Below are positions 36,924 to 56,375 of a DNA stretch of 64,000 nucleotides, one piece after another. Source of the stretch: Ostrea edulis (taxonomy: Eukaryota); contig NC_079165.1 of NCBI RefSeq assembly GCF_947568905.1, positions 45,942,001-46,006,000 of the forward strand, read 5' to 3'. The notes beneath the pieces are model-generated. The model had not been told where the DNA came from. It did no database searches and was given only the letters and a program-made list of their open reading frames with translations. Made by a program: the position numbers and the translations under genes. How positions within the stretch are numbered: position 1 is the first letter of the stretch; each line of letters opens with the position of its first letter.

Positions 36924-37928
36924 TCAAGACGGCACGGACATTTCAGTTGAATGGAAGGTCTTGTTGCAGTTACATAATTGCCTAAAAGCCCTCCGAAACT
37001 TTACATCAAAGCATATATATATCAAAGGATTCATGAAATGGTTGATAATTGAAAACCGCCCAAAAATCGTCCATGTTATGAGGGCATTTTTAGGAAAGTT
37101 TAAGTAGTTCACATGAGAATAGTCCAAAACGAACAGAACAATTGTTGGAACGAACGATACGATGTAAACAACGACAATCACGGCATACATTACATTAAAC
37201 CCACAATGGACGCCTGCATGTGTACCTTCGGAATCCCCACAGATCAGCGGCTCACGTTCTGTCTCGGTCACGTAGAAGAGTTTTCTTAATCTTAGTGCAA
37301 TAAGGGCATACAGAACCACAAGAACAACAAGAATGATCATCATTATCGCACAAATGAAACCCATATACACGAATAGCAAATGGTGATAACGACGAACATT
37401 GTGCATGTCAATGTACTTGCATATATTTCCAGAAACGTTTCGTTCTTGAAATTGTATTGAAATTGTTGGAGTTCCAGACAGGGCAAGCCATGGAATCGTG
37501 ATGACAGCTGAGGCTACCACTGTGGAACAAACTGAAATCCTCCTGCAAAACAACGTCAATTCGCTGCTACGTACATGGCACACTTTTTTGTAACGCTGCA
37601 CGGCAATGATTAGAAGAAAAGATGCCGATAGAAAGCCAGTGAACATCAGCGAAAAATGAAGCAACCTGCAGCATGTCTCAGACGGGTAGTTGAAAAAGAA
37701 ATAATTATCCGTTACATTGTAAACTGTCATTGAGAGCGATCCTAACAAGTCCGTGGCGGCCAGGATGGGAATGAAGTACCGATTCCCATTCTTGTCAGCG
37801 ACTTTACAACAGTACAAGAGAATTACAATGATGTTTCCAACGACACCCAGAATTCCAGCAGTTGTAATGAAAACAGTGTTTGGCAATATTATATTCGCGT
37901 ACTCTTGAGATAAATTAGCCATGGGCAT
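36924..37928 (-). CDS. Intronless orphan class A (rhodopsin-like) GPCR, ~332-334 aa
   Basis: Seven hydrophobic segments. TM1 GVVGN, TM2 LAATDLL, QRY in place of DRY, TM6 SFVP, TM7 NPLIY, helix 8 KFRRAF. Likely start is the ATG at 37928 or 37922, followed by the N-glycosylation site NLS. The ORF track begins at an upstream TTG. Confidence 0.9.
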   Translation of the reverse strand: MPMANLSQEYANIILPNTVFITTAGILGVVGNIIVILLYCCKVADKNGNRYFIPILAATDLLGSLSMTVYNVTDNYFFFNYPSETCCRLLHFSLMFTGFLSASFLLIIAVQRYKKVCHVRSSELTLFCRRISVCSTVVASAVITIPWLALSGTPTISIQFQERNVSGNICKYIDMHNVRRYHHLLFVYMGFICAIMMIILVVLVVLYALIALRLRKLFYVTETEREPLICGDSEGTHAGVHCGFNVMYAVIVVVYIVSFVPTIVLFVLDYSHVNYLNFPKNALITWTIFGRFSIINHFMNPLIYICFDVKFRRAFRQLCNCNKTFHSTEMSVPS

Positions 37929-38009
37929 TAAAATATAGAATGGCACACAATCTACAAAATATGGCTGTATCTCGTTGCAAAGCAATTATTTATATAAATA
38001 TTTCCAAGA

Positions 38010-40708: not shown

Positions 40709-42117
40709 TCAGTTTTCATCAGGTTCAGGTTCTAAAGGATAAAATAAAAAGTTGTCAAGTAACTGAGCAATACAACATACCATGCTTCCCGTTAGCTTCT
40801 TCCTATATATTCAATACCCTACTATTTTCACACAGAGCACGGATATACATACAATATCACTATTTCTTTTGTGTAACTTGACTTTTCCCCCTTCTTTTTA
40901 CATATAATCCCATTTATTTAGAGAGATAATGTGCTCATCTGTGGATTTGAACCTGGAGCAGAAAGCTCGCTAATCGAAAATGCAAACCATTCCGTCATCT
41001 CTTCTCTATACGTAAATAGATCGTATATAAACCACAGTTTATCACTAGTTAATAAAACTGCTGTAGAGAAAACTTGTCCAAATATTTGATTAACACAAAA
41101 ATGATGGATACTCCCCTTCAGGTCATGCACTATTTGTCAAAACCCTTATTACTATTTTGGCAAAGCATACAAAAAATGTAATGTTACTATATATGTACAT
41201 GTATATAAAAGAGATTGTTATTTCCTGTATTTTTTTCCTTTCAATAGAATTATCTTACTGTGATATTGACAGGCGTGTGTGTGTATCTGATTATCCATAC
41301 AGTAACAAACCTGGTATATTATACTTCTGTCGTATTTCCTCCATCAAATCTGTGCGGTCACAGGTCTCCAAAGCAGTAAAGAGTCGTTGCAGCAGAACGT
41401 TGTCTGCCTGATCCTCCTGACGATCTCGCCATTTCTGTAGAGCTATGCTAATCTGGTTAAGCACTTTGTAAGGGTTGTCTAACTGTATCTGCTCAATCTC
41501 TGCTTGTTTCAATCCAAGATATCCAACCACCAGGGACCACTCAGCTCCCAGTCTGGCAGCCACATACATCAAGCCAAAGTCAGTTAGAATGCCTGAAATC
41601 AGTCAATTAATTCCAAATATTTTCATTCACGGAACCCTTTCTCTTATTTTTCTTTTCAAATTGACATTGCTTTCATTATAGACAATGAATACATGTTTTT
41701 GCAAACTAGTTCAATCGTTTTTTTAGTACAACCTGTCCACGCAATCATTACCAAAAATGGAGCCTTGTCAAGGTCAAAGGGTATATTGGCTGTTCTGTTT
41801 AAAGTAACGAATGTGTCAAAGATATGATATTTTAGTACTTAAAAATGTAGTTTATATTTTTAAAAACTACATAAAAATATAAACAAATATCAGGAGATGA
41901 AGGTAGCAATCATTGCAGCAAAATTTGCATAACCCGCATTAGCACAATTTTTTCTGCAATGTTTGCTACCTTCACTACCCAATAAAATGACAGAGAGTAT
42001 TTTATTGTCTAAATGAATCAAAAACTTTCATTAGGGCCCCACAGTAGGTGGATACCCTACAGTGATCAGCCTATGTGTGTGTGCAGCTGTCTGTCCATGC
42101 AAATGTTTTTCTGGACT

Positions 42118-42151
<34 letters not shown>

Positions 42152-45100
42152 GTATCCCTGCAGCTATTGAATTGAAAATTTATACACGAATTTATATCAG
42201 TAGGTTACATATCAAGCTTGAGTCTCCTTTACATAATGCTACAAACAGGGGCCCCTTTGTGATACTTGCCATCACAATGATATTTACATGTAGCTGTTTA
42301 ATACGTTCATTCTGAGTATCACACAACAAAATATTACTATTTATCAAAAGCATTGCATTCTGATGATTCAAGATACATTTTTCAAACTGGGAAGTGAATG
42401 TTGTCAGTATTTTGCAGTCTAAAGCAATGGCAATTACTTCTAATAAAAACGGCTGGACAAAAACTTCATTATGATAGCATAATGACCTTGATTCACAGTA
42501 ATGACATAAAATTATTCTCATTGATTAAGTATGAGGTTCTAATGTTCATCCTTTCACAAAGTTACAGAATGGGACACCTATTTGTAAGGTTTTTAACCAG
42601 TCATTTGGACCAGACTGACCTTGTCTGATCATAAGAAACCTTTCTGCCACATATCAGCTTTTGAAGACCCTCCACTATATAAAGTTATCATCCATAGAAA
42701 ATAGTTAATCTCTTTATACTTTATACACATGTACCTGTGACCTTGACTTTGGTATGTTGAAAATGATTCAGGGTCGTAAATAACTTTTGCAAAAGTCTCT
42801 GCAACATAGTTGTGGCCTACAACAATTATCACAATAACTCGAGCATTGACAAAATGATCGTGACTCATAATGTATAAGCAACCTCTATGCCAAGAATGAG
42901 CTTTTAAAATCTGTGATTTGAACAATTTTTCCCCTAGTGACCTTGGCAAAATGACCTATACTCAGGGTTATAACAAAATTGTCAAATCATAAGCAACTTT
43001 TAATACAGGTATAAGTTTGTAAAGTTTATTGATTAATCATTTCAAGTTACATACAATGTGGAATGGAAGGATAGAAGACAAAGAGGAAGAGATGGAGAGA
43101 AATGGCTTCCCCTATTTATCATCCAAACTTAAGTTTGTAATGTCTATTATTATGCACAAAGCTTTTACATGTTAAGGTAACCCCACCCTCATGTGACCTC
43201 ACATTATTATGGGTTCAGAGTAAAAAAAAAAAAAAAAGCATTAATTTCCACATTATATAATTTTGATTTAATCAATAGCAAAATAAAATGTATATGTTGT
43301 CGCTTCTATAAAGATGTCAGCCACACACAAACAAAAGTATATATCAACATCAGAAAAATGCTCATTTTCAATAAACAGTATAATAAAAAATACACAAAAA
43401 AAGTGGTTAAAATGACAAAGTTTTAATTTTAACAGTTTCAAAAACAAAAACAAAAAAATGCTTGTTTATAAATTTATATGAATCAACTGTGTATATCAGG
43501 GAAAACATTGTTTAATAGACATACAACAGAGTATGCCAGCATAGGAGTTATTGCCCTTGACAACATTAATTGATTATTTATCGAAAATATATAAACCTTT
43601 TCAGTATCAAATAGTTTTACCAATTTTTTTATTGAACCTAGTGAATAAAATTCCTACAGAATATATGTTTCTATCAATCACAAATTTTAATCAATTAATG
43701 ATTTTGCAAAAACCTATGAGGTTACATGGGGATGTTCAGGAGTACAGAGGATATTTACCAATGTATTGTATTTTTAGCATATACCATATAGCCCTACCCT
43801 GTGGTCTGAAGCCTTGACCAAAGAGTAAACAAGAAATGTTTGTAAAACATATGTGCCCCCATGGTGCAAATTTGAAGAGGGTTATACACATGCATCATTT
43901 AATTGATAGTACAGGTGTAGTGTCATAACAATTCAAGATATTGAGTGGACAACATCTTCCTTTTAAGATATTGAATGGACAATATCTTCCTTTCAAGATA
44001 TTGAGTGGACAATATCTTCCTTTCAAGATATTGAGTGGACAACATCTTCCTTTCAAGATATTGAGTGGACAACATCTTCCTATGGGCAGTTTGACCCTTG
44101 ACCTTTGACCATGTGACCTCAACATCAATAGGGGTCATCTACCCTTTAGGATGTACCAGGGTTCCAAGTTTCATGTCTGTAAAGCAAAGGGTTCTCAATA
44201 CATGTATATTGAGTAGACAGTATCTTCCTATGTCCAGAGTGGATTGACTCTTGACTTTGGCCCAAAAATCAATAGGGGTCCTCTTTTACTCAAAACAACA
44301 TATGAAATATTATTATGATCAAGTGAATGGTTCTTAAGATATTGAGTGGACAACATGTGATCTACTGACTGACATACCAAAAGACCGACCGACAGGTGCA
44401 AAGCAATATGTCCCTCTTCTTTGAAGGGGGGATAAAAATTTCACAATTTTAGTAAGGGATTTTATGCTCATTATAACTATGCACCCAGTTTATTTCCTTC
44501 ATGTTTTAAGGAGTAAATATTTTGAAATATGAAATATATTTTCTATATATGACCCACTTAGCCCAGTTATGATGCCTGAACCCCTGACCCTGGGGCCATA
44601 ATTTGCACAATTTTGGAAGAGGCTTCCCTGTTCATTAAAACTATGCACTAAATTTGGCTCTACTGTACATGTTCAGGAGTTCAAACATGGAAACATTTTC
44701 TCTATATGACCTACTTGGCTATCTATCAACTTAAAATATGATTAATTCTTGTCATAATTAGCACTAATTCAATGGTAATGACTAAAAAAATAGTATTGTT
44801 CATATCAATCTCAATGTCTATCACACTGAAAATAGCATGCATTTGTTTGAGCACCAATGATGCTTAAGCTTCTTGGAAATTCTAACAACTAAAATGCATT
44901 TTAGTTATCAAATAAAAGAGTTACTGAACAAGCTAATGAATATTCAACCTAACTCATGCCAAAATATTTACCAATAAAGATTGGTACAATTGATATGCAT
45001 ATACAGTATATATATTTGTGTGTGTATAAAAAAAATTTGTGAGCATATGATACAATGTTTATAGTGTAAGACATCATTATACAAAGCTAACACAAATGAA

Positions 45101-48100
45101 GGAATATGATGGATTTAAATATTAAAATTCTTCATTTATAATCATTATAACTCTATCAATGTCACTGTCAGCTGTTCAGATCATACAAGTACCAGTATCA
45201 AGGTTCTGATGTTCAGCAAAATTTGCAAAAATCAATTAGAAGTGCCAGTGGGTAAAAAGTATTCGAAACATTTTAATGCTGACCGATTTAGGCATTGAAA
45301 TGTGTCGTACAGTAAAGTGCAATTTTTTTACTGAAATTTTGAAGTTTAATAATGACCTTTAACCTTATCTGAGCATAGTGTGTGACCTACCTGACCCCGT
45401 GCCATCCACTGTGTCCTCTAGACTGGCCAGGAACTCCTTTAACACTATTACGTGTTGTCCAATGTTATCCTGGAAATCTAGTCAACAGAAAACACAAATG
45501 AAAGATCGAAATCTGTTATCTGAATTAATATTTTCCAAGTTACAACACATTAATTATAAATAACATGCATATTTAATAGTAATTGGTTAACATTTTCTGT
45601 ACTTCATAATTATCATTCCAAGATAATGTGTTTTCTAATTTAAATGTGCTTGGTAATGATACATTAAGATAACTAAATGATTAACTTATTTGTACAGAAT
45701 TGGGTATGCTTTATAGGATTGAAAGTATTTCTTCATTTTGTTTTTTAAACAAACTGTGATTTGGTAATCCCTGCCATTCATTAGTAAACCAAAAGTATGT
45801 AAACACATTTATAGAAATTCACCTCATTTCCATAATTGGTTTTAATTTTTTTAAATTCTTTACCATAGTGCTGTTATAAAATGTGTGATTAAAGATGTGC
45901 GTGGGGCACAGGTAACGAGATCAGCTCTCATTTCCTATCACAAATTGTATATGCATCAAGCTGGCAGAAACAACAACACCTTCATTAATCATTATTCATC
46001 AAGGAAAACCAAATAAATGTAAGTACGAAGGTTTACGTCACAGTCTGTTACCTCCGTCATCAAAACTAAAATAAGCCTGGCTTTGTCAGAGTTACTCATG
46101 GTCTATCCTATAAAACAGGTAAGCAGTGTACTGCAATTTCATTTTTTTACCATAACATCTATCAGTCTTTTTAATTCAAAAATTTATCAATAAAATTTTC
46201 CAATCACAATTTTAAAAAAAATGATACATTGATTTTCTTAACTTATAAATATTTCTATATAAGGTTTTACTATGAAGACAGAGTGGATTCTTGGTATTTC
46301 CATTTTAATTTTCACACCATGTCAGGGTAAGTTTTAAAAACACTAGGTTAGATGTTGATTCTCCGGAAACAATTATGGCATAAAGGTTTTAAATTATACA
46401 AAATCATAATTATAATCATCATTTGTGTGATCAAGTTAGACAGAAAACATTGATAACTTGATAAATCTAATACATCAATATATATATATGTACATATATG
46501 ATATCATTCACAGGCCAGTTACCATTTGAGGTGGCATCAGAAGACCTTGGAAATGCTGAAGCGGATTTTATTGATTTCTTTCTGAGTAATCCAGACATGT
46601 TATTTAATGCACTGGATATTAATACTGAGACAACAACCTTAGCACCACTTGAAACCATAACCCTCAACTCTGGAACGGAACATACAGGGACACAGCAGTC
46701 TAATAATGGAACGGAACATACAGATCATACAAATCATGGAACGGAACATATAGATCATACAGATCATGGAACAGAACATACAGATCATGGAACAGAACAC
46801 ACAGATCATGGAAGTGAAACAGCTGGAAACAAAGATTCTGAACATGGATTAGTTGTGGAGGATGGCATGGTGCGTGACCCTGTATCTGGTTCCATTACTC
46901 ATTTATTTGACATACATGATGGGGCACTCTTAGAGGTTATACAAAGTGAAATAACTGGTGGACATGTAATTGACCCCCATACTGGAGAATTGATTCTTCT
47001 TTCTGAAATTTCTTTGTCAGAGGATACACATGCTTCCCAGACTACAACTGTATCCTTGACAACTGCTGATTCTACCACAGAAAGCCCCCATTCTAATCAT
47101 CCAGGGGAAAGTACAATTTCTGAGGTTAACAAAAATCAGATTACTTCACAGAACAAAATTGTGAATGGAGTTATCAGAGATCTGAGTACGGGTAAGATCA
47201 CACATATTGTGGATCCCCACACTGGTGAACATCTGAAAGTTATAGAAAGTCCAATATTTGGAGCTCATATTTTTGACTCCAAAACTGGTGATCTGATTAT
47301 TGCAGAAGATCATGCTCTGGAGCATGGTACAATTGATGTCCAACCTCAAACCTTACAGCAACAAACCGACGCTCCTCCACCACAAACAACACCAATAAAC
47401 ATCCCAGAAACTACAACAAAAGCTTCTACCACAACAACCCCAGAAGCAACCACCACAACAGAAGCAACCACCACAACAGATGCAACAACCACAACACGGG
47501 CAGCAACCACAACAGAAGCAACCACCACAACAAAGGCAATCACAACAGAAGCAACAACCACAACACAGGCAACCACCACAACAGAAGCAACCACCACACC
47601 AGATGTACATATATTAGAGGCTTTGGAGAAGGCAACTGTAGCTGCAACTAAAAAAACATTCACAACAACAGTTCAAACACCAGTACAGACTACCACAAAG
47701 AATCCAAAAGTATTCACGCAACAAGTACCGGCTGATCATGATAGCATTCATACACATGATAATGACCATCAAAATAACCGAGGAATAGTGATACATAACA
47801 TAGTGTCTTCCACTCCACAAACACCATCAAATAGGTTGTCAACAAACAAACCACCAAAAAGGAGAAGGAAATTTGGTACAATGAAGGGAATACACTCCAT
47901 ATTAAATAAATACAAGTCAGAATACGTAAAAACCAAAAAGAATCGAAAAGAAAAGTATGGTGATGACAACAATAATCCCAACATAAACAAAGTATTGAAA
48001 TGGATCGAACGAAGAAAAAATCAATTCAAAAAGGTTTTGCATAAAAAAAAGCATATTGAGGAAGAAAAGAAAATTAATCCAAATAAAAGATTTAAAATTT

Positions 48101-50782
48101 TAGACCTGGAAACCTATTTTCCAAGTCTTAAACGAAACAAATTCGGAGGACTAGAGGCACGGAAGAAGTGGAGAAATGCAGTGGGAAGCCCTAAGTCAAG
48201 AAACAGAAAGAGTGAAAACAAGAATACCCAAAGTACACTGTCAACAGAAAACAAGGCCAATTTAAACAGGTGGCATAGCAGAGCAATATTTCAAAATCCA
48301 CACAGCAAAAGAGTAGCAGGTGCAAAACAAGGAAACCAGCAGAACACAGCCAGGAAGAGGGAGTTTAATAAACAGATGTCCACCAAACTAAATCAAAAAA
48401 AGATGTCAACAAAAAAGAACAGAAAAACAACTAACACATCTACAAACACTGAGTTATCCAATAAGCCAACAACCAATACCAAAACACCCCCCACCAAAAA
48501 ATCTCGTCAAAGAGGGAAACGTAGAAAATTCAAAAATCTTTTTGCAAATAGACGAAGAGATTTTTTACGACGAAAACAAAAGAAACAAACACCAGTGAAC
48601 AAACACTCTGATAAACACACTGATCTGGAAAACTATGTAAAAAGTTTGAAAGAAAAAGTGACTGAAAACAATCCTGCATCACATCCAGAAAATCAAACTG
48701 CAGAGTCATACGCTTCTGATTTTGCCAGGAAAATAAATAACAAAAGAATTGCAAGAGACCCTAAAAATGTTAAATTGAGAAAAGCAAAATGGGAAAAGTC
48801 ATACTTAGCAGGCCAAACTGGGACATAATTCTAAAATTATAAAGCATGTAATAAAGGTGTATTCAGACTCAGTTCTATGTTCTTGTTTAATATTCATCAC
48901 GGTCACTTAATCTCTTTAGAGAAGTGGACAAGCCTGCTACTGTTCCCAATCTTTCCTCTAGTCTTTTGGCTCTGTTTAATTTGCAGTTCATGGCATAAAC
49001 AAAATAGAATCTATACTTATATCAGGGTGTTTGCATATTCATTTGAAAAAATGTACCTTTATTTTTCAAACAGTTCTTTTACACATCATTAAGCAAAGCT
49101 TCAAACCCTGTCATGGCCTGACCCAGGACCCATGCTGTGAACAAACTTGAATCTACAATTCATGGGGATATTTTGCATATCTAATTTGACAAACTGTACA
49201 CCTGTGGTTCTTGATCAGAATTTTTAAAGAACTTGAATCTACATTACATATGGATGCTTGTATTATGTATACCACTTCGACATACTGTGTCAGTGTTTAT
49301 TAAGAAGATTTTACAAGCAATTTTCTGTTATACTCCTATGTAAAATTTAGACCCCAATGATGACACTGGCAATGGGAATCATGGTTTAAACTATCTTGCA
49401 TCTAAAGTATACAACAAAGATTTCATATAACTTTTGGATCTACTGGTTCAGTGGATCTTAAGAAGAAGATTAATTCTAAACATCTCCCTCAATTTTTTAA
49501 ATTAATTTCCCTTCGAATGGGGAGTGACCCTTCATTGAAATAATTCTAAATCCTCTTTATCCAAGGATAATTTGTGGCAAGTTAAGAAATGTACATAGTT
49601 AACAATGGACATACTTGTAAATAAGTATCAAAGTCATTCTTCAGTCAGAATGGGGTTTTTTTGTTTTTTTTTTAAGTTTTACAAAACATCATACCAAAGT
49701 TTTTGATTTTTACACCTACTGATATTAAATTGAAATATATTTTAAAACATATGGCTATTTTGTTTCTCTTGGGACTCTTCCATGTTTCATATAATGAAAT
49801 GATTTTCAATCTGGATCAGTATTTGTTTTAGAAATGTCACTAAAATGTTACTACATGAAAAATAAGAAGATCTAAAGCTTGGCGATAGGAAACAAAGTAG
49901 ATCAATGCACTCATACTGTAGGAAAACAATGAACATGGCAATGCTGCTGCTGAAAGAAGTGCTATCATACACTATGTAACACTGCAGCCATGAAGAATCT
50001 GACATTCAAAGTGCTGGGTTTACCATAATCATAAAGGTGTGTTAAAAAACAACAACAACAAACCACTTCAGATAAAACATGTCACAAGGCCAAAGTGGGT
50101 ATTGGAACAATAAAATCATGTGGCATTTTACCAGATATAAAGTTGGTGGCAATGCTATGGCCATATGAAGAAAATTCAAAATATTTTTTCCTTTAATACC
50201 CGATATATTACAGATTGTGTAATTTTATATTTGCTTTATTAAAGAATCTGGTTGCTTTAGCCAAGTTGTGAGGCCGCTTGCTTTGTAACTAGGGTGTCCT
50301 AAGTTCGATTCTTGATAGGAATGCCAAATCTAACCAAAGATCTTTAACATAGCAAATGACATCAGAAGCAAAAATCATGGGTCTTTCAGTAATGATCTTA
50401 AAAATGAAGGTGTAATGTCACTGTAGACTTGGCAATATAAAGAACCCTCACTGCTGTGGCACCGAGTGTCATGCAATGGTTAAAATTTGTGGCAATTCAC
50501 CTACAGCTGGTGATGTCTCTATAAGAGTAAAAGTTCATTGAATGAGAAATAAAAGATCATACAAATCAACAACAAAAAACCACAAACAACACACACACAC
50601 AATTTTTGAGAAAATGTACTAGTACAACTAATAGTTCTGCCTCACTGACATGTATTTGGAAAGACAGTTGGAAATTCATGCTACAGTGTAAAGGGACTGA
50701 TTCACACCCCCCCCCCCCCTCATTTTGTTTTTCACTTTAAATTGTTAAAATATACAGTCTAATACAGTTATATGTTTAAAAG

Positions 50783-50818
<36 letters not shown>

Positions 50819-53800
50819 ATGAAGGTCATAGATCATGACAGTAGCTCATTATAGAGAGTTTATTATTTGTTTTGAAAACAAAGATTGAGGTGTGTCATTG
50901 TTTACAATGTTTTCAAAATAAATGGATATCGTGGATATCGATCCAAATTTATTATATATATCACATTTCAAGTATACTTTTGGTAAAATGTGTCATTTAA
51001 AAGTAAAATTTGTGACTGTACAAAATTAAGATGCTTTGAATTACAAAATTAACTTTTCACTGGTTTGTTTGTAAACATAAAAAGCTTGAGTGTTTGTTAA
51101 CATAACACAGAGTTAAGGCTAAAATTATGCTCTTTTCCTTGCATTCAGAAGGTCCAAATTTTCATTTTCAACATCAAACGAGTTGTATTTTTAATTTTTA
51201 ACATATAAAATGAAAAATATTTTCTTCAAAACACATTGCCAAAAGAAATGTTAACTTCACCTTTCTACATCATTTCATTGAACTTCTTGCATTGAGTTAT
51301 ATATTTGATATGGTAGAGTAAAATGCATAGTATCTTCTGTCTAATTACACATACAAACCTGAATCCAGGGGAATAACCAGGCAAGCTGGAACAAAAGTTT
51401 CTGGAGACTTTTGGCAGGACTGAAGCTGATACAGTTTCTTGGGGCATACAGTCTCCAGGTAGAGTTCTGCTGGGTACTGGTGGGGTTCAGTATCCCCTCG
51501 CAAGATACAGTGAGAACACAGTAAGTACTGCTCCACATGGACTAAAGGCCATTCTTGGAGCAGAGATTTCATGTCTTGGTAGATTCTCAGGAGCAGGTAC
51601 CTAATATCAAAATATATATGTTTACTTTTTTTGGTATTACAGGCACATCAAAATTCTATATCCAGATATGTACATGTAATTCACAATATTTTTTTTCTTT
51701 TGTACAGACAATCATTTTGATGTCAGAATACTGTGCTGTGCTTTTGAGAGGACATTCTAAGTTTTAAGAATTTGTGTCTGATCCTTTCGTTACAACAGCT
51801 GTACAATGAAATAGGTTCAAATCACCTTGTTGTTTATTCCGAGGAGCATGGCTAGAGGTACATAAAAGGGCAGGACATGTATTTGTTATTTAAGTACACA
51901 TCTCCTATATAAACAGGTAGTGTGGCTGGTAGATTATAACAATCATACTGGGCTCTACATAGTTAAAGTATTCAGCTTAAAACTAACTTCAAAATTAGGT
52001 AAAACTCATCAAGGCCCTGACCCACCATTTACCTGAGTTCCTGCAGATCACTGCCCCTGACTGCCATCACTTACCAGAGTTCTTGCAGATCACTGCCCCT
52101 GACTGCCACCACTTACCAGAGTTCCTGCAGATCACTGCCCCTGACTGCCACCACTTACCTGAGTTCCTGCAGATTACTGCCCCTGACTGCCATCACTTAC
52201 CAGAGTTCCTGCAGATCACTGCCCCTGACTGCCACCAAAATGTCTGTTCTGCCATCCTTCTGCTCACGGGTCACAAGGATCTTGGATTTATTCTTAAATG
52301 CGAGGACACCATTTTTCCAATCCTCTCGTTTAGACACATGAGCCTGCAGCCTTGAAGAGAGTTTTTCAAAGAAGTTTGGAGGAGATTTCGATGGGAACAG
52401 GTACAGAGCAGAGAGTTCCACGATATTCCTCGGAGTTTTAATGGGCCACTTCACAAACACGTCATTGGATGCTTCTGTTTTAAGGAACCATGGAAATCTC
52501 AAAATGCGACTAGATGTATAATTTGTTTGCAAGCTGCTTGGAATTTCATAACATAAGTCAAATTTCAACATGAGATCAACAAAAGTGTCTCTTGCTTCTG
52601 AAGAAAGTTTGAAATGATAGAGACAAAAGTGGAGTAACTCCAGTGTCATAATCCCTTTTGTGAGAAAATCTTCCTTCATGGCAACAAATTTCTTCTGAGT
52701 CAAGCCAGCAATTTTCCCAAGAATTTCATCATATACCACTACTTTCTCAAAATCGTGTTTAAATATTGCCCGCAACATTTCAACCAAAGTTTCTGGCTGA
52801 TGAAACACAATTCCCTGCAGCTTGGGGTTATCTGAATACCACATGATTTCTCCCGTAGCATGTAGATACTTCAGAACCATCTCTAGACTTGACACTGCTG
52901 ATCCCTGAAGTGAAATCATACTCTGTTTCAATTCATTCATCACATCTTCAAAAATTCTCAGGGCCTCTATAAATGGCAGGATTTTCTCTGGATATATGGC
53001 AATCTTCTGCAGATATTTCCACCATGGATCGGGTAATGGTCTTTCCTCTGCATCCTTCAGAGTTTTCACCAACAAATTTCTGAACTCATCAACACCTGTC
53101 AGTTCATCAGCACAACTCACAACATGTATTTTCTGTGGCAACTTTGATCTTGTTTTCAACATTTTGTAGATGCCATTTCTTTTTTCTCTAAGTCTCTGAA
53201 TTTCAATGTCTTCAAATCTTGTACCAGTATCTTTATTGGTCAGTGAATTGAGAGCATCATCTGTTCGGACTAATTGAATCTCTATTTCTTGTATCTTTTT
53301 ATCTTCAATGATTTTCATTTTATCAGAGATATCCTCTAATATTTCCTCAATTTCATCTGCCTTGCAAAGGTCAACATGGGTTCCCACCATCATAATAACT
53401 GCTCCAGGAGATCTGTCCATGATGGCATCCAGCCAGTTACCAACAAAGATATCATACAGATCTGGTTGGTACTTACTCAAATCAAACACTAAAACATGCA
53501 AAGCATCTGGGGTCAAAAACATGTGGTGTGCAGCAGAATAAATATGATGTCCACCAAAGTCCAACAATTGGACTCTTAGATCAGATTCCGGCTCCCAAAG
53601 ATGACGTTCTAGGACCCATGTCCTCTCATGCTCTGCTGTTAATTTAGAGTGGCCTAGAATCAAAGCATTTCGAAGACTAGTTTTTCCTGCTTTAGCTGCA
53701 CCGATCAATATCATTTTCATTCTGTGTTTTGCCTGGCTGATTCTGTACTCTCTTAAAAAGGTAAAGAGTGCATCAGTGCCTTGGTTACAGACTTCTTGAG

Positions 53801-55055
53801 GAGGAACTTTAATGCTGTTACCGCCGAGATCTAACAGCCCTGTCTTTGCAAGCATCTGTAATTTGTCTAACAGCAGTGGTATGCTGGTTAAGTCATTAGA
53901 TGAAACATCCAGTTCCTTCAGGTTTGCTAGTTGGTAAATATTTTCTGGTAATTGTTTTAGTTCATTTAATGACAGCAGAAGTGATTCAAGACTCAAACAG
54001 TCACACAGCTCTGCAGGAAGAGTGGTCAATTTGTTTCCACGCAATTCCAATGTTTTCAGCTTCTTTAATTTCTTTATAGAAGGGGAAAGTTCCTCCAGGT
54101 AATTGTCACCAATTTCAATACTTTCTAAATGTTTCAAGTCAAACAAAGTCTCTGGGAGACTCACCAATGCATTTCTTCTCATGATAAAATGCTTGAGCTT
54201 TTTAAGTCCATTTATCTTTGGTGAAATTTCTGAAAAATAATTGTTATTCAAGTTTAATGTCCTTAGTTCAGACAACTGCAGTAACTCTGGCGGAATGTAA
54301 GAATTTAGTTTCAATGCCCCTGTCAAATTAAGCTCCCTCAAACTAGTGCAATGAACAATATTTGAGGATACATATTTCAGGAAATTTCCTTTCATATTCA
54401 GAGACTCCAGTTTTGTCAAATTGCCCACTTCATCTGGAATTGTATGGATCTGATGCCAACTGACATCCAGATACTGCAGCTCCTTCAGCCCACAAGCAGC
54501 TTTCGGTAGTTCCTTCATCCCTCCTTCTCTTGGATACCATTTTCTTGACAGCACAAGATATTCGATTTTCTTACAATGGCTAAGTTCGTTTGGAATTTCC
54601 GACAAGAGATTACCACCTAATTTTAGTGTTCGCAAATTCCTTAATTTTCCGATATCTGGTGAAAGAATTTCCAAATCATTATCTCCACAATCCAGCTCAG
54701 TTAGAGACTCCAAATTAAACACCGGCACTGGGATCTGTTGAAAGTGGTTGAAGCTCAGGTTGAGTTTTTCTATGGATTTGCAGGTACCAAAAGACTTGGG
54801 TAAAAGGCATAAATAATTTCCCACTGCACTGAAATTCTTCATTCCAACTAAATTTCCTATTGAGGTACCACCAACAGGAAATGACATGAGTCTTAAGAAT
54901 GGCAGTGAGACATCCTCCAGGTGCATACTGTAGATGATGCGTGGTACCCATCCTTTGTATTTTCCCTCTGGCACAATCAAGATTGATCTTCCTTTAGGGT
55001 CTTTCTGCACATACTGTTTGAATGCCTCAGAGGCATGACTGTTTGTTGCCATCAT
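40709..55055 (-). CDS. MFHAS1: LRR-Roc-COR-Death ROCO protein (MFHAS1-like with a C-terminal death domain), ~1162 aa
   Basis: complement(join(40709..40731,41311..41592,45391..45477,51359..51600,52201..55055)) = 3489 nt, open. An unspliced alternative ends at 41291. About 13 LRRs; Roc G1 GAAKAGKT, G3 LDFGGH, G4 VGTHVD; COR (L.YLHATGEIMWY, QPETLVEMLRAIF, LMLKFDLCY, FPWFL); a CSHC..C..C motif; death domain (ARLGAEWSLVVGYLGL..IEQIQLDNP..ALQKWR..ALETCDRTDL). The symbol means '-like'; orthology is untested. An upstream coding exon cannot be excluded because the frame is open from the acceptor at 55073-55074. Confidence 0.9.
43934..44083. repeat. 30-bp tandem repeat (5 copies) within a dispersed element in a ROCO intron
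   Basis: Unit CAAGATATTGAGTGGACAACATCTTCCTTT, with further single copies at ~44205 and ~44337. Confidence 0.9.
46272..48828 (+). CDS. Secreted low-complexity polyampholyte protein (~789 aa), nested antisense in ROCO intron 2
   Basis: join(46272..46326,46514..48828) = 2370 nt, open, phase-1 GT-AG intron. Signal peptide MKTEWILGISILIFTPCQG. Blocks in order: acidic N-terminus, GTEHTDH repeats, two ~50-aa internal repeats, a TTEAT mucin-like tract, and a Lys/Arg/Asn-rich C-terminal ~320 aa. A probable 5'UTR exon ends at the donor GTAAGC at 46119. Confidence 0.85.
50270..50570 (+). mobile_element. Degenerate tRNA-derived SINE
   Basis: A-box-like TAGCCAAGTTG and B-box-like AGTTCGATTC, body AAAGAACCCTCACTGC, tail ending ACAAATCAAC. 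Confidence 0.5.
52025..52236 (-). repeat. 42-bp tandem repeat (5 copies) made of the 3' end of ROCO coding exon 1 plus its splice donor
   Basis: Minus-strand unit GTGGCAGTCAGGGGCAGTGATCTGCAGGAACTC(T/A)G|GTAAGTG(A/G)TG-like. GT donors at 52200, 52158, 52116, 52074 and 52032. Confidence 0.95.
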
Positions 55056-55129
55056 TACAGCTGACTGAAATACTGCAAAAGGAGCAAGAAAACAAAACGG
55101 TTACACATTTAAACTCATACTGAAAACTC

Positions 55130-56375
55130 AATACAAGAGGCCCATGGGCCACATCATTCACCTGAGTCACCTTCGCACATATATTCAATGATTTTCCCTA
55201 TACATGTATATTCACATGTAAAACTTTGATCCCTACCTCTGAAGACAATGATTTACTATGTCAGAACCAGAAGCTTCCGTGTAAATTTGAACTTTACTGG
55301 CCCAGTAGTTCTTGAGAAGAAGATTTATAAAGATTTTTTTCTATATATTTACATTAGTGATGGGCAATCGGACCAAAAACCATAATCGATTATCGGTAAT
55401 AATTGGACACATGTAATCAATTAATAATCAGAATTGTCATTTAAGTTTTTTCCCCTCAAAATAGATAACAGAATAATTAAACATATGGAAGCAACATTTG
55501 AATTCTTCTTTGTTTCTTTTGTTCACAGGTAAATAAATCAGAATTTCAATATATCAAGTAATGAAAATTATTTATAATCACAATTTCTCAAAGATATCAA
55601 AAATAGACTCCTTTATCTGACTGATGAATGTTGTTACCGTCCTTCACATCTCCCGTCATTTTGTTTGCTTGTTTTTTTATTGGGTTTGACATACAGAAAA
55701 TAAAATTTGAACAAAATTGAATTTCTGGATTTTTTTTGGGGTCAACGATGTTGGTGACATTTATTTTGAAATCGATTAGTAGAATCATAGGTCTCTGAAT
55801 GGCCGACAATCGATCATTGGCAAAAATCATCTCATCACTAATTCACATGTAAAAATTTGATTCCTTATTGTGGTCCCACCCTACCCCCAAGGGCCATGAT
55901 TTAAAAAAATTCGAATCTGCACTGTAAGAAAGCTTCCATGTAAATTTGAACTTTTCTGATCCAGTGGTTCTTGAGAAGATTTTTAAATGACCCCTCCCTA
56001 TTCTTGTGATTATCTCCCCTTTGGGAGGAACATGGCCCTCAATTTGATCAAAATTATATTCCCTTCACTCAAGGATGATTTGAGCCAAGTTTGATTGAAA
56101 TTGGCCCAGTGGTTATTGAGAAGAAGATTTTTAAAAGATGCCAATTTTTTTTTTTTTTTACTAATTTTTGATTATATCCACTTCAAAATGGGTGTGGCAC
56201 CTCATTTGAATATGTAGTTACAGTTGAATCCTCTTAACCCAAGTTTGCTTTGTGACAAGTTTGGCTGAAATTAGTCTTGTGGTTGTGGAGAAGAAGTCAA
56301 AAAGTTCATGGACAGATGGATAGACAAACTTGACACCGGACGAAAGGTGATCAGAACAGCTCACTTAAGCTAATA
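55130..56375 (+). mobile_element. HINE/Helitron-like non-autonomous element interrupted by a hAT MITE
   Basis: Starts ACAAGAGGCCCATGGGCCACATC..CACCTGAG and ends GGTGATCAGAACAGCTCACTTAAGCTA. The sequence resumes (ATTCACATGTAAAAATTTGA) after the insertion at 55355-55840. Confidence 0.6.
55355..55840. mobile_element. hAT-type MITE
   Basis: TIR TAGTGATG...CATCACTA. 8-bp TSD ATTTACAT (55347-55354) and ATTCACAT (55841-55848), 1 mismatch. Confidence 0.8.

What the first reader, a model, noticed from the sequence alone, without database searches (positions are those of the whole stretch)
46272..48828. Nested antisense gene encoding a secreted block polyampholyte (acidic/His, Thr-rich, highly basic)
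Seen: a two-exon 789-aa ORF with a clean signal peptide lies entirely inside ROCO intron 2 on the opposite strand. I saw no Cys in the mature chain. Its blocks are ordered acidic N-terminus, (GTEHTDH)n, two folded-looking repeats, (TTEAT)n, then ~320 aa dominated by Lys/Arg/Asn with multibasic sites such as KRRRK and RKRRK. Established: His-rich metal-binding blocks and charge-segregated low-complexity sequences characterise molluscan shell-matrix, adhesive and coacervating proteins. Inference: a novel biomineral, cement or mucus component, possibly self-coacervating or processed by convertases into cationic peptides. I recognise no homolog.
Basis: partly seen in the sequence, partly recalled or inferred. 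Interest (0 to 1): 0.75.

Follow-up and report, generated by a model that had tools for sequence, protein, structure and literature searches.

The report
Oyster secreted mucin-like charge-block protein gene
This is a real, spliced and conserved oyster gene, sitting backwards inside an intron of a larger gene, that encodes a secreted cysteine-free protein with an acidic histidine-rich head, a sugar-bearing threonine stalk and a strongly basic helical tail; its job is still unknown and it belongs to no described family.

Summary
A plus-strand gene at about 46062-48871 encodes 789 aa: a signal peptide, then a Cys-free chain with an acidic N motif, (GTEHTDH)n, two ~55-aa His/Asp repeats, a Thr-rich tandem array and a 325-aa tail of net charge about +68.

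- **Transcription:** RNA contigs show the predicted intron (46327-46513), an extra 5'UTR intron (46119-46263) and a poly(A) tail at 48871 after AATAAA. The gene therefore has three exons, not two.
- **Nesting:** It lies in host intron 45480-51360 of a minus-strand LRR-Roc-COR-Death gene. Saccostrea and Crassostrea share this arrangement.
- **Relatives:** Single-copy orthologues (45-51% identity, auto-named 'mucin-3B-like' and 'mucin-22-like') exist in other oysters. All have a signal peptide and no mature Cys.
- **Selection:** dN/dS is 0.06-0.27 in five modules and 0.4-1.0 in the linkers. The tail holds conserved helices. The His repeat is expanded only in this species.
- **Deeper family:** An exhaustive profile search found three distant relatives with the same module order in an unidentified eukaryote, one in conserved linkage. 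No Pfam, PDB or Atlas match appeared.

Best reading: a non-polymerising mucin-like extracellular protein with a metal-binding head and a polyanion-binding tail. Tissue and function are untested. This is an ordinary nested gene encoding an uncharacterised family.

The parts
46062..46118 (+). 5'UTR exon 1 (the part supported by a contig; probably starts further upstream, about 45900)
   Evidence: In one search an X1 contig carries the joint 46116>46262 (GT..AG, cut +2), which places the donor GT at 46119-46120. The upstream block 45897-46067 is 70-77% identical to Saccostrea and Crassostrea loci. The Crassostrea mRNA-derived ORF P0007 reads through at least 237 nt of 5'UTR.
46264..46326 (+). Exon 2: 8 nt of 5'UTR, the ATG at 46272 and the signal peptide MKTEWILGISILIFTPCQ(G)
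   Evidence: The joints on both sides appear in one X1 contig. The orthologues carry equivalent signal peptides ending G/S before QLPFE.
46327..46513 (+). Intron 2 (187 nt, GTAAGT...CAG)
   Evidence: In one search the joint 46325>46513 skips 187 nt with GT..AG ends. The same intron is spliced out in Crassostrea contig L004.
46514..48871 (+). Exon 3: 770 codons, TAA at 48826-48828 and a 43-nt 3'UTR
   Evidence: RNA contigs cover it in runs X1 and X3.
46516..46617 (+). Conserved acidic N motif (QLPFE...LGNAEADFIDFFLSNPDMLFNALD)
   Evidence: It is nearly invariant in oysters, with dN/dS 0.09-0.16. The core A-x-A-x-FID-x-x-x-x-NPD is shared with distant relatives P0050 and P0051.
46702..46813 (+). 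His-rich tandem array (GTEHTDH)n, expanded only in this species
   Evidence: TRF gives periods of 21 and 30 nt. The orthologues have a gap here. Two DNA runs carry an in-frame 9-nt indel at 46717/46720.
46828..47010 (+). R1, first His/Asp-rich beta-type repeat unit
   Evidence: Alignment A4 shows invariant G, TH, D, H, L, V, S, I, H and D. dN/dS is 0.06-0.09. AF2 predicts short strands at low confidence.
47152..47343 (+). R2, second repeat unit
   Evidence: It aligns in A4, has dN/dS 0.10-0.16 and is an own-genome profile hit.
47344..47715 (+). Thr/Pro-rich mucin-type (PTS) region containing the 18-nt tandem array 47441-47603
   Evidence: Thr makes up 30 of 50 residues at the peak. TRF finds 9.2 copies. 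The region is poorly conserved, with dN/dS 0.4-0.7.
47851..48825 (+). Basic C-terminal region (325 aa, about 29% Lys+Arg, net +68) with conserved helical modules C1 (aa 446-555) and C3 (aa 701-770)
   Evidence: Charge is. Invariant motifs include RRKFG, KYxSEY, VLKWIExRK, YFPSLxRNKFGGLE and KSYLA. dN/dS is 0.14 in C1 and 0.2-0.27 in C3. AF2 predicts helices with block-mean pLDDT up to 79 and pTM 0.20. The helix at aa 490-520 is amphipathic, with muH 0.59.
48850..48871 (+). AATAAA signal (48850-48855) and poly(A) addition site (about 48871)
   Evidence: The sequence is. An X3 RNA-Seq contig ends at 48871 followed by a run of 25 A.
45480..51360 (-). Host-gene intron that contains the whole nested gene
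   Evidence: An X1 RNA contig covers the 90-nt exon 45390-45479, and its loose ends map to 51361-51390 and 41562-41591. The minus-strand splice sites are visible.
52185..55094 (-). Host-gene large exon (LRR, Roc and COR-A domains)
   Evidence: Pfam finds LRR_8 at 1e-30, Roc at 1.4e-10 and COR-A at 5.3e-10. The exon is 88% identical at the amino-acid level to the Saccostrea host gene.
41294..41602 (-). Host-gene Death-domain exon
   Evidence: Pfam finds Death at 1.4e-12. It is syntenic in Saccostrea.

Best explanation
This is a single-copy, three-exon, protein-coding oyster gene, transcribed from the plus strand inside an intron of a minus-strand LRR-Roc-COR-Death gene.

Its product enters the secretory pathway. 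The mature chain begins at QLPFE and has no cysteine, so it cannot form disulfide-linked polymers. It is built from five selected modules separated by fast-evolving spacers:
- an acidic N motif;
- two copies of a ~55-aa His/Asp-rich beta-type unit (R1, R2);
- a Thr-rich stretch of the kind that carries mucin-type O-glycans;
- a strongly cationic C-terminal region made of conserved amphipathic or charged helices.

I infer that it acts outside the cell as a monomeric mucin-like matrix or mucus glycoprotein. The cationic helical tail would hold it electrostatically to polyanionic material such as sulfated or carboxylated glycans, acidic matrix or microbial surfaces. The glycosylated stalk would act as an extended, hydrated spacer. 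The acidic His/Asp head would bind divalent metal ions or a partner.

Shown here: gene structure, splicing, polyadenylation, conservation, selection pattern, nesting and absence from known families. Inferred only: secretion (from sequence), glycosylation, metal binding, polyanion binding and the site of action.
For: **Transcript.** Both introns appear as GT..AG joints in an RNA contig. An RNA-Seq run shows a poly(A) tail at 48871 downstream of AATAAA.

**Orthologues.** Saccostrea cucullata XP_062587394.1 is 51% identical. Crassostrea virginica XP_022322077.1 and two large Logan clusters are also orthologues. All have a signal peptide ending just before QLPFE and zero Cys in the mature chain.

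**Copy number.** The gene is single copy in its own genome.

**Selection.** dN/dS is 0.06-0.16 in the N motif, R1, R2 and C1, and 0.2-0.27 in C3. It is 0.4-1.0 in the linker, PTS and C2 regions.

**Secretory features.**
- No hydrophobic segment follows the signal peptide; the maximum Kyte-Doolittle 19-residue mean is 0.72.
- The Thr-rich 18-nt tandem array has 9.2 copies.
- Charge is segregated, about -44 against +68.

**R unit.** It has three invariant His and two invariant Asp (a third in at least 90% of rows) across ten aligned units.

**Tail.** It is predicted helical with no tertiary packing; block-mean pLDDT reaches 79 and pTM is 0.20. One helix is a strongly amphipathic cationic helix.

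**Wider family.**
- The same module order recurs in distant relatives P0050 and P0051: signal peptide, N motif, His run, R unit, Thr-rich stretch, polybasic helical tail.
- P0050 sits next to a HAD-hydrolase gene whose oyster counterpart lies 66-71 kb from this gene.
Against: - **No expression site:** No tissue, stage or protein-level evidence was obtainable. The runs are coded, and contig depth cannot rank expression.
- **Untested chemistry:** No glycosylation, metal-binding or polyanion-binding data exist.
- **Weak models:** AF2 models are low confidence, with mean pLDDT 41.7 for the repeats and 52.0 for the tail. The fold of the R unit is therefore unknown.
- **Tail homology unproven:** The oyster tail and the tails of the distant relatives are not alignable. 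Shared tail function rests on composition alone.
- **Other roles fit:** A conserved basic tail with conserved RRKF motifs would also fit proteolytic processing or a gamete or immune role.
Confidence: 0.45

Rival explanations
1. The protein is a self-associating block polyampholyte used as a structural material in shell matrix, larval or adult cement, or periostracum. The acidic head of one chain would pair with the basic tail of another and condense by coacervation, with His-metal cross-links.
For: The chain shows extreme charge segregation, about -44 against +68. It has a signal peptide and no Cys. This species has a His-rich array. The distant relative P0050 carries a 1,250-aa His/Pro/Val/Asn-rich extension reminiscent of structural proteins.
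Against: - There are only 7 Tyr and 35 Gly in 770 aa, so there is no DOPA- or Gly-based adhesive chemistry.
- There is no Asp/Ser-rich mineral-binding block.
- The His heptad array is absent from the other oysters.
- The most conserved parts are discrete motifs and helices, not composition.
- No paper or proteome mention was found, although supplements are not searched.
Confidence: 0.2
2. The protein is a precursor that is cut at conserved di- or multibasic sites (RRK, KRRK) to release cationic amphipathic peptides, either antimicrobial or signalling. The acidic N half would serve as a neutralising pro-region.
For: Invariant RRKF occurs twice. The conserved segment FGxMKGIxSxLxKYxSEY is flanked by basic clusters in all species. 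There is a cationic amphipathic helix with muH 0.59. Anionic pro-region plus cationic peptide is a known layout for antimicrobial precursors; this last point is general knowledge, not tested here.
Against: - No furin-type R-x-[KR]-R site is conserved. Crassostrea has TGRRK and Saccostrea has TQRRK at the first site.
- The Gly needed for amidation is not conserved.
- The N half contains two strongly selected domains (dN/dS 0.06-0.16), which is unusual for a mere pro-region.
- A 100-aa mucin stalk is not typical of peptide precursors.
Confidence: 0.15
3. The protein is a reproductive or gamete-surface protein, such as an egg-coat, sperm acrosomal or seminal component. It would use the basic tail and His/Asp head in gamete interaction.
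For: Secreted, Cys-free, highly basic proteins occur among mollusc acrosomal proteins; this is general knowledge, not tested here. The linkers evolve rapidly and a repeat expansion is specific to this species.
Against: The core modules are under strong purifying selection across genera, unlike typical fast-evolving gamete-recognition proteins. No expression data point to gonad.
Confidence: 0.08
4. The protein is not secreted. The basic tail would be a nuclear-localisation and nucleic-acid-binding region, and the N-terminal hydrophobic stretch would not function as a signal peptide.
For: KRRRK and RKRRK-type clusters resemble nuclear localisation signals.
Against: A classical signal peptide sits on a dedicated exon. 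Its n-, h- and c-regions and small residues at -3/-1 are kept in all four species examined, and the residue after the cut is invariant. A Thr-rich PTS array is also present.
Confidence: 0.03

Closest known systems
Small non-gel-forming secreted mucins (for example vertebrate salivary MUC7), compared from general knowledge
   Same: Both have a signal peptide, a monomeric chain with a central Thr/Pro-rich tandem-repeat (PTS) region, and a charged His-containing non-repeat domain next to it. RefSeq pipelines also name the orthologues 'mucin-3B-like' and 'mucin-22-like'.
   Different: There is no sequence similarity to any mucin domain and no Cys at all. The PTS region is only about 100-120 aa. 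Most of the selected sequence lies in the N motif, the R units and the basic helical tail, none of which mucins have.
His-rich metal-binding structural proteins of marine invertebrates (mussel foot protein-4, Nereis jaw protein, squid beak His-rich proteins), compared from general knowledge
   Same: Both are secreted and have His-rich tandem peptide repeats alongside charged blocks.
   Different: The His heptad array is not conserved even among oysters. The conserved His residues lie in a defined ~55-aa domain instead. Tyr and Gly are very low, and there is no sequence match.
Oppositely charged cement polyelectrolytes (sandcastle-worm Pc proteins), compared from general knowledge
   Same: Both combine strong polyanionic and polycationic character in secreted proteins, which is the basis of the coacervation idea.
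   Different: Here both charges are on one chain. The anionic part is only moderately acidic and is not phosphoserine-based. The cationic part is made of conserved helices.
Uncharacterised relatives P0050, P0051 and P0049 from ENA metagenome assembly ERZ26168041
   Same: They share the module order: signal peptide, A-x-A-x-FID-xxxx-NPD motif, His run, R unit, Thr-rich stretch and polybasic helical tail. P0050 is linked to the same HAD-hydrolase neighbour as the oyster gene.
   Different: They have one R unit, not two, and it carries two Cys. The tails are not alignable to the oyster tail. P0050 has a 1,250-aa N-terminal extension. No Roc/COR gene lies within the flanks available. The source organism is unidentified.

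Membership tests
Gel-forming mucins (MUC2/MUC5 type) | Cys-rich VWD/C8/TIL and cystine-knot domains for polymerisation | tested here: not met
   No Pfam domain is found at E<=10 except a sub-threshold Plectin match. The mature chain and all orthologues have zero Cys.
Gel-forming mucins (MUC2/MUC5 type) | Long Pro/Thr/Ser tandem-repeat region | tested here: met
   There is an 18-nt tandem array of 9.2 copies, and Thr reaches 30 of 50 residues. The region is short, about 100-120 aa.
Mucin-like secreted glycoproteins (broad class) | Dense O-glycosylation of the PTS region | not testable with these tools
   This needs glycoproteomics or lectin blotting.
Plectin repeat (PF00681) | Match above the Pfam gathering score | tested here: not met
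   The match has E 0.26 and 11.6 bits against a cut-off of 20.5, over 13 residues only.
Amidohydrolase superfamily, N-terminal beta-sandwich segment | Significant sequence match, reproducible with a broader profile | tested here: not met
   There is a single hit at E 0.99 (8rja_A) with profile A2. It was not recovered with the more diverse profile A4.
His-rich DOPA adhesives (mussel foot protein type) | High Tyr (DOPA precursor) and Gly/Lys content in tandem repeats | tested here: not met
   The chain has 7 Tyr in 770 aa. The His repeat is not conserved in orthologues.
Acidic shell-matrix proteins (Asp/Ser-rich type) | Long Asp- or phospho-Ser-rich blocks | tested here: not met
   No 50-residue block holds more than 10 Asp plus Glu, and no poly-Asp or poly-Ser run is present.
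Convertase-processed peptide precursors | Conserved R-x-[KR]-R or Gly-Lys/Arg-Arg sites flanking conserved short peptides | tested here: inconclusive
   Dibasic RRK motifs are invariant, but the P4 Arg and the amidation Gly are not conserved. Cleavage cannot be tested here.
New family defined here (N motif + R unit) | A-x-A-x-F-I-D-x(4)-N-P-D motif followed by an R unit with invariant G...TH..D.H....L.V..S.I...H..D | tested here: met
   Alignments A4 and A5 include the window, three oyster orthologues and the two distant relatives P0050 and P0051.

The most novel reading that the evidence does not exclude
The gene may found a previously undescribed family of lophotrochozoan extracellular 'tether' proteins. 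A new ~55-aa His/Asp metal-binding domain and a polycationic helical tail, joined by a glycan stalk, would drive metal- and charge-dependent condensation. In that case a single-chain complex coacervate would be used in oyster cement, shell or mucus formation.
Probability: 0.12. Interest if true: 0.6.

Novelty: new variant of a known kind. Interest (0 to 1): 0.35.

Why it matters
Oysters cement themselves, build shells and coat their surfaces with secreted proteins, most of which are uncharacterised. This gene gives a clean, conserved, single-copy example with two unannotated modules (the N motif and the R unit) that recur in the same order in a distant species. It therefore defines a small family that can be tested directly for metal binding, polyanion binding and phase behaviour. 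The nested antisense position is conserved across oyster genera, but nested genes are common in animal genomes (PMC13309782, PMC3786989). The nesting alone is therefore not remarkable.

Tried and rejected
**Family and structure searches**
- **Pfam:** Only a sub-threshold Plectin match appeared.
- **ESM Atlas:** Feature searches of the repeat region and of the tail gave no usable hit.
- **PDB profiles:** Searches with A2, A3 and A4 gave only E of about 1 or worse. The amidohydrolase-like resemblance of the R unit did not recur with the broader profile, so I dropped it.
- **AF2:** Models of the repeats and of the tail had mean pLDDT 41.7 and 52.0. They were too poor for a fold search, so I ran no fold search.
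- **Tail homology:** hhalign of the oyster tail against the P0051 tail found no homology, probability 0.3%.

**Literature**
- Searches by accession, automatic names, peptide motifs, run accessions and descriptive terms gave nothing relevant.

**Context and paralogues**
- No second gene with the R unit was found in the own genome.
- No ROCO exons lie near the distant relatives.
- Two Crassostrea virginica contigs that might have shown the host gene were not on record.
- ORFs flanking P0051 gave no oyster match.

- **Joined protein:** I did not search the joined 789-aa spliced protein as one sequence. Exons were handled by reference, and exon 3 carries 770 of the 789 codons.
- **Complex prediction:** I did not use it, because no specific protein-protein contact is claimed.


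Full report
**What is there**

The long plus-strand ORF at 46498-48828 joins in phase to a short upstream coding segment. The ATG is at 46272. Fifty-five coding nucleotides encode MKTEWILGISILIFTPCQ plus one base. A GTAAGT donor follows at 46327 and the acceptor is CAG at 46511-46513. The product is 789 aa. I never submitted the joined protein as one sequence. All searches used exon 3 by reference (770 codons, window:46516-48825:+) or parts of it.

- The N-terminal 50 aa are acidic.
- A (GTEHTDH)-type array follows (21/30-nt tandem repeat, 46702-46813).
- Two related units of about 55-60 aa come next, 41% identical to each other.
- A Thr-rich region contains an 18-nt array of 9.2 copies at 47441-47603.
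- The last 325 aa have about 29% Lys+Arg, 12% Asn, pI 11 and net charge about +68. The first 445 aa carry about -44.
- There is no Cys after the signal peptide and no second hydrophobic segment.

**It is transcribed, spliced and polyadenylated on the plus strand**

I laid four public runs on 45000-50500.
- **X1:** One contig carries two GT..AG joints. One is exactly the predicted intron (46327-46513). The other removes 46119-46263, so there is an additional 5'UTR exon ending at 46118.
- **X3:** This run is on record as RNA-Seq. Its contigs lie on 47661-48871 at over 99% identity. The last one continues into a run of A after 48871, 16 nt past an AATAAA at 48850.
- **X7 and X11:** These cover introns and flanks evenly and behave as DNA.

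Two caveats apply. X1 is labelled as a different organism from the DNA holders and differs at several percent of sites, so the splice evidence may come from a close relative or divergent haplotype. Contig depth cannot be used to rank expression.

**Host gene and nesting**

The minus strand carries a 2.9-kb exon with LRR, Roc and COR-A domains (52200-55100) and a Death-domain exon (41294-41602). A 90-nt minus-strand exon at 45390-45479 has clean splice sites. It sits in an X1 RNA contig whose flanking letters map to 51361-51390 and 41562-41591. The host intron is therefore 45480-51360, and it contains the whole plus-strand gene.

The arrangement is conserved:
- In Saccostrea cucullata the orthologue lies antisense inside a 1,162-aa LRR-Roc-COR-A-Death gene. 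The exon-by-exon order is the same, and a neighbouring rhodopsin-type GPCR gene is also shared.
- A Crassostrea contig carries the 90-nt host exon upstream of its copy.

Nested genes are frequent in animals. [quoted passage not shown] The topology itself is ordinary.

**Conservation**

Word-index searches with the whole exon-3 protein and with two sub-regions found only four clusters, all from oysters. They include Saccostrea cucullata XP_062587394.1 ('mucin-3B-like', 51% identity) and Crassostrea virginica XP_022322077.1 ('mucin-22-like'). Two Logan clusters have 121 and 647 member sequences.

Every full-length orthologue has a signal peptide that ends G or S just before an invariant QLPFE, and none has Cys in the mature chain. 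A Crassostrea mRNA contig has the same intron removed. The gene is single copy in its own 895-Mb genome.

Nei-Gojobori dN/dS varies by block. dS is near saturation, so the values are rough.

| Block | dN/dS |
|---|---|
| N motif | 0.09-0.16 |
| R1 | 0.06-0.09 |
| R2 | 0.10-0.16 |
| C1 (aa 446-555) | 0.14 |
| C3 (aa 701-770) | 0.20-0.27 |
| Inter-repeat linker, Thr-rich region and C2 | 0.4-1.0 |

The alignment shows that the His heptad array is an expansion private to this species. It is even length-polymorphic, with an in-frame 9-nt indel in two DNA runs.

The basic tail holds long invariant motifs: RRKFG.MKGI.S.L.KY.SEY, PN.N.VLKWIE.RK..FK, YFPSL.RNKFGGLE.R.KW, RRKF and KSYLA. AF2 predicts these as helices without tertiary packing; block-mean pLDDT reaches 79 and pTM is 0.20. 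One is a strongly amphipathic cationic helix. 'Block polyampholyte' therefore describes the charge layout well, but it understates the amount of specific, selected sequence.

**A wider family**

An exhaustive HMM search of 1.84 billion representatives with the repeat-region profile gave 11 hits.
- **Non-family rows:** Apart from the two oyster orthologue representatives (P0001, P0003), four hits add no new family member. P0047 and P0048 are bisulfite-converted copies of the oyster gene. P0054 and P0055 are bacterial repeat proteins, one of them carrying CshA-type adhesin repeats, with chance similarity. I did not inspect the sequences of P0052 and P0053. P0052 matches only the low-complexity linker.
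- **Distant relatives:** Three proteins from one metagenome assembly (ERZ26168041) score E 5e-9 to 1e-8. They are P0050 (1,598 aa), P0051 (470 aa) and P0049 (281 aa).

Read directly, P0050 and P0051 each have the same module order:
1. A signal peptide.
2. The motif SAHA.FID.W..NPDA, matching the oyster NAEADFIDF.LSNPD.
3. A His run.
4. One R unit sharing all invariant positions, G, TH, D, H, L, V, S, I, H and D. Here it has two Cys.
5. A Thr-rich stretch.
6. An extremely basic Lys/Arg/Glu/Gln helical tail.

The tails do not align with the oyster tail.

Two exons of a HAD-type hydrolase lie 6-9 kb from P0050. Their best matches in the oyster genome (64-70% identity) are at C2:45,917,100-45,922,610, only 66-71 kb from this gene. 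In an 895-Mb genome that is very unlikely by chance. P0050 is therefore probably the positional counterpart in a distant species. No Roc/COR exons occur in the 19-21 kb available around P0050 and P0051, so the nesting may be specific to oysters. The source organism is unidentified.

**What it is not**

It has no Pfam domain, no PDB sequence relative and no Atlas look-alike. It fails the defining features of several families:
- Gel-forming mucins, because it has no Cys-rich domains.
- DOPA adhesives, because it has only 7 Tyr.
- Acidic shell-matrix proteins, because it has no Asp/Ser-rich blocks.

A faint resemblance of the R unit to the N-terminal strand pattern of amidohydrolases (E 0.99) did not survive a broader profile.

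**How it most likely works (inference)**

The conserved signal peptide, the missing membrane anchor, the Cys-free chain and the PTS array point to a soluble, monomeric, O-glycosylated extracellular protein. The R units have three invariant His and two invariant Asp (a third in at least 90% of rows), which makes them plausible divalent-metal or partner-binding modules. The cationic helices are suited to binding polyanions. The stalk would separate the two ends.

I give this tether-type mucin-like reading 0.45. The alternatives are:

| Reading | Confidence |
|---|---|
| Coacervating structural material | 0.20 |
| Processed cationic-peptide precursor | 0.15 |
| Gamete protein | 0.08 |
| Non-secreted protein | 0.03 |

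None can be settled without expression-site and protein data, which the tools could not give.

**Verdict**

The functional inference remains open. The gene is already present in RefSeq annotations of related oysters under automatic mucin-like names and is otherwise undescribed. It defines a small unannotated family. This is a solid but modest finding.

Noticed in passing
Loci L014 and L015 (Crassostrea-type contigs); window 42000-55000: Two hits of the big search (P0047, P0048) are translations of bisulfite-converted DNA. In L014 against the unconverted L003, all 475 non-CpG C are converted but 24 of 26 CpG C are kept, so the gene body is CpG-methylated in that sample. In the window, CpG o/e is 0.3 in the nested gene and 0.07-0.47 in 1-kb windows across 42000-55999 of the host gene. 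It is 0.97 in the neighbouring GPCR gene. The nested gene lies inside the host's methylated domain.
   Followed up: partly
window 45787-46076: A non-coding block upstream of the nested gene, covering its promoter and 5'UTR exon, is 70-77% identical to Saccostrea and Crassostrea although synonymous sites are saturated. It lies only about 400-500 nt from the host's 90-nt exon.
   Followed up: partly
window 52010-52267: The peptide from the end of the Saccostrea host-gene exon matches four times in tandem here.
   Followed up: partly
window 36927-37985 (-): An intronless rhodopsin-family GPCR ORF of 353 aa (7tm_1, E 1e-19) is syntenic with, and 59% identical to, a Saccostrea ORF downstream of the host gene.
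   Followed up: no
window 49048-49231 and 49416-49599, 50336-50500: Contig depth spikes in the DNA runs, up to about 23,000 against a background of about 86, and many loose ends occur. These mark high-copy repeats or transposable-element fragments in the host intron just downstream of the nested gene.
   Followed up: no
window 46717-46728: Two DNA runs carry an in-frame 9-nt deletion inside the His-rich array, at slightly different registers. The repeat is length-polymorphic but stays in frame.
   Followed up: no
G000:C2:45917100-45922610 (outside the window, about 25 kb before its start): A HAD-type hydrolase gene here is the counterpart of the gene next to distant relative P0050. This is evidence of old conserved linkage.
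   Followed up: partly
L010:4542-9338 (P0050): The distant relative has a 1,250-aa N-terminal extension made of degenerate His/Pro/Val/Asn-rich repeats (HVH, NPNNV, VDP motifs) with no Pfam match. It may be a structural protein in its unidentified host.
   Followed up: no
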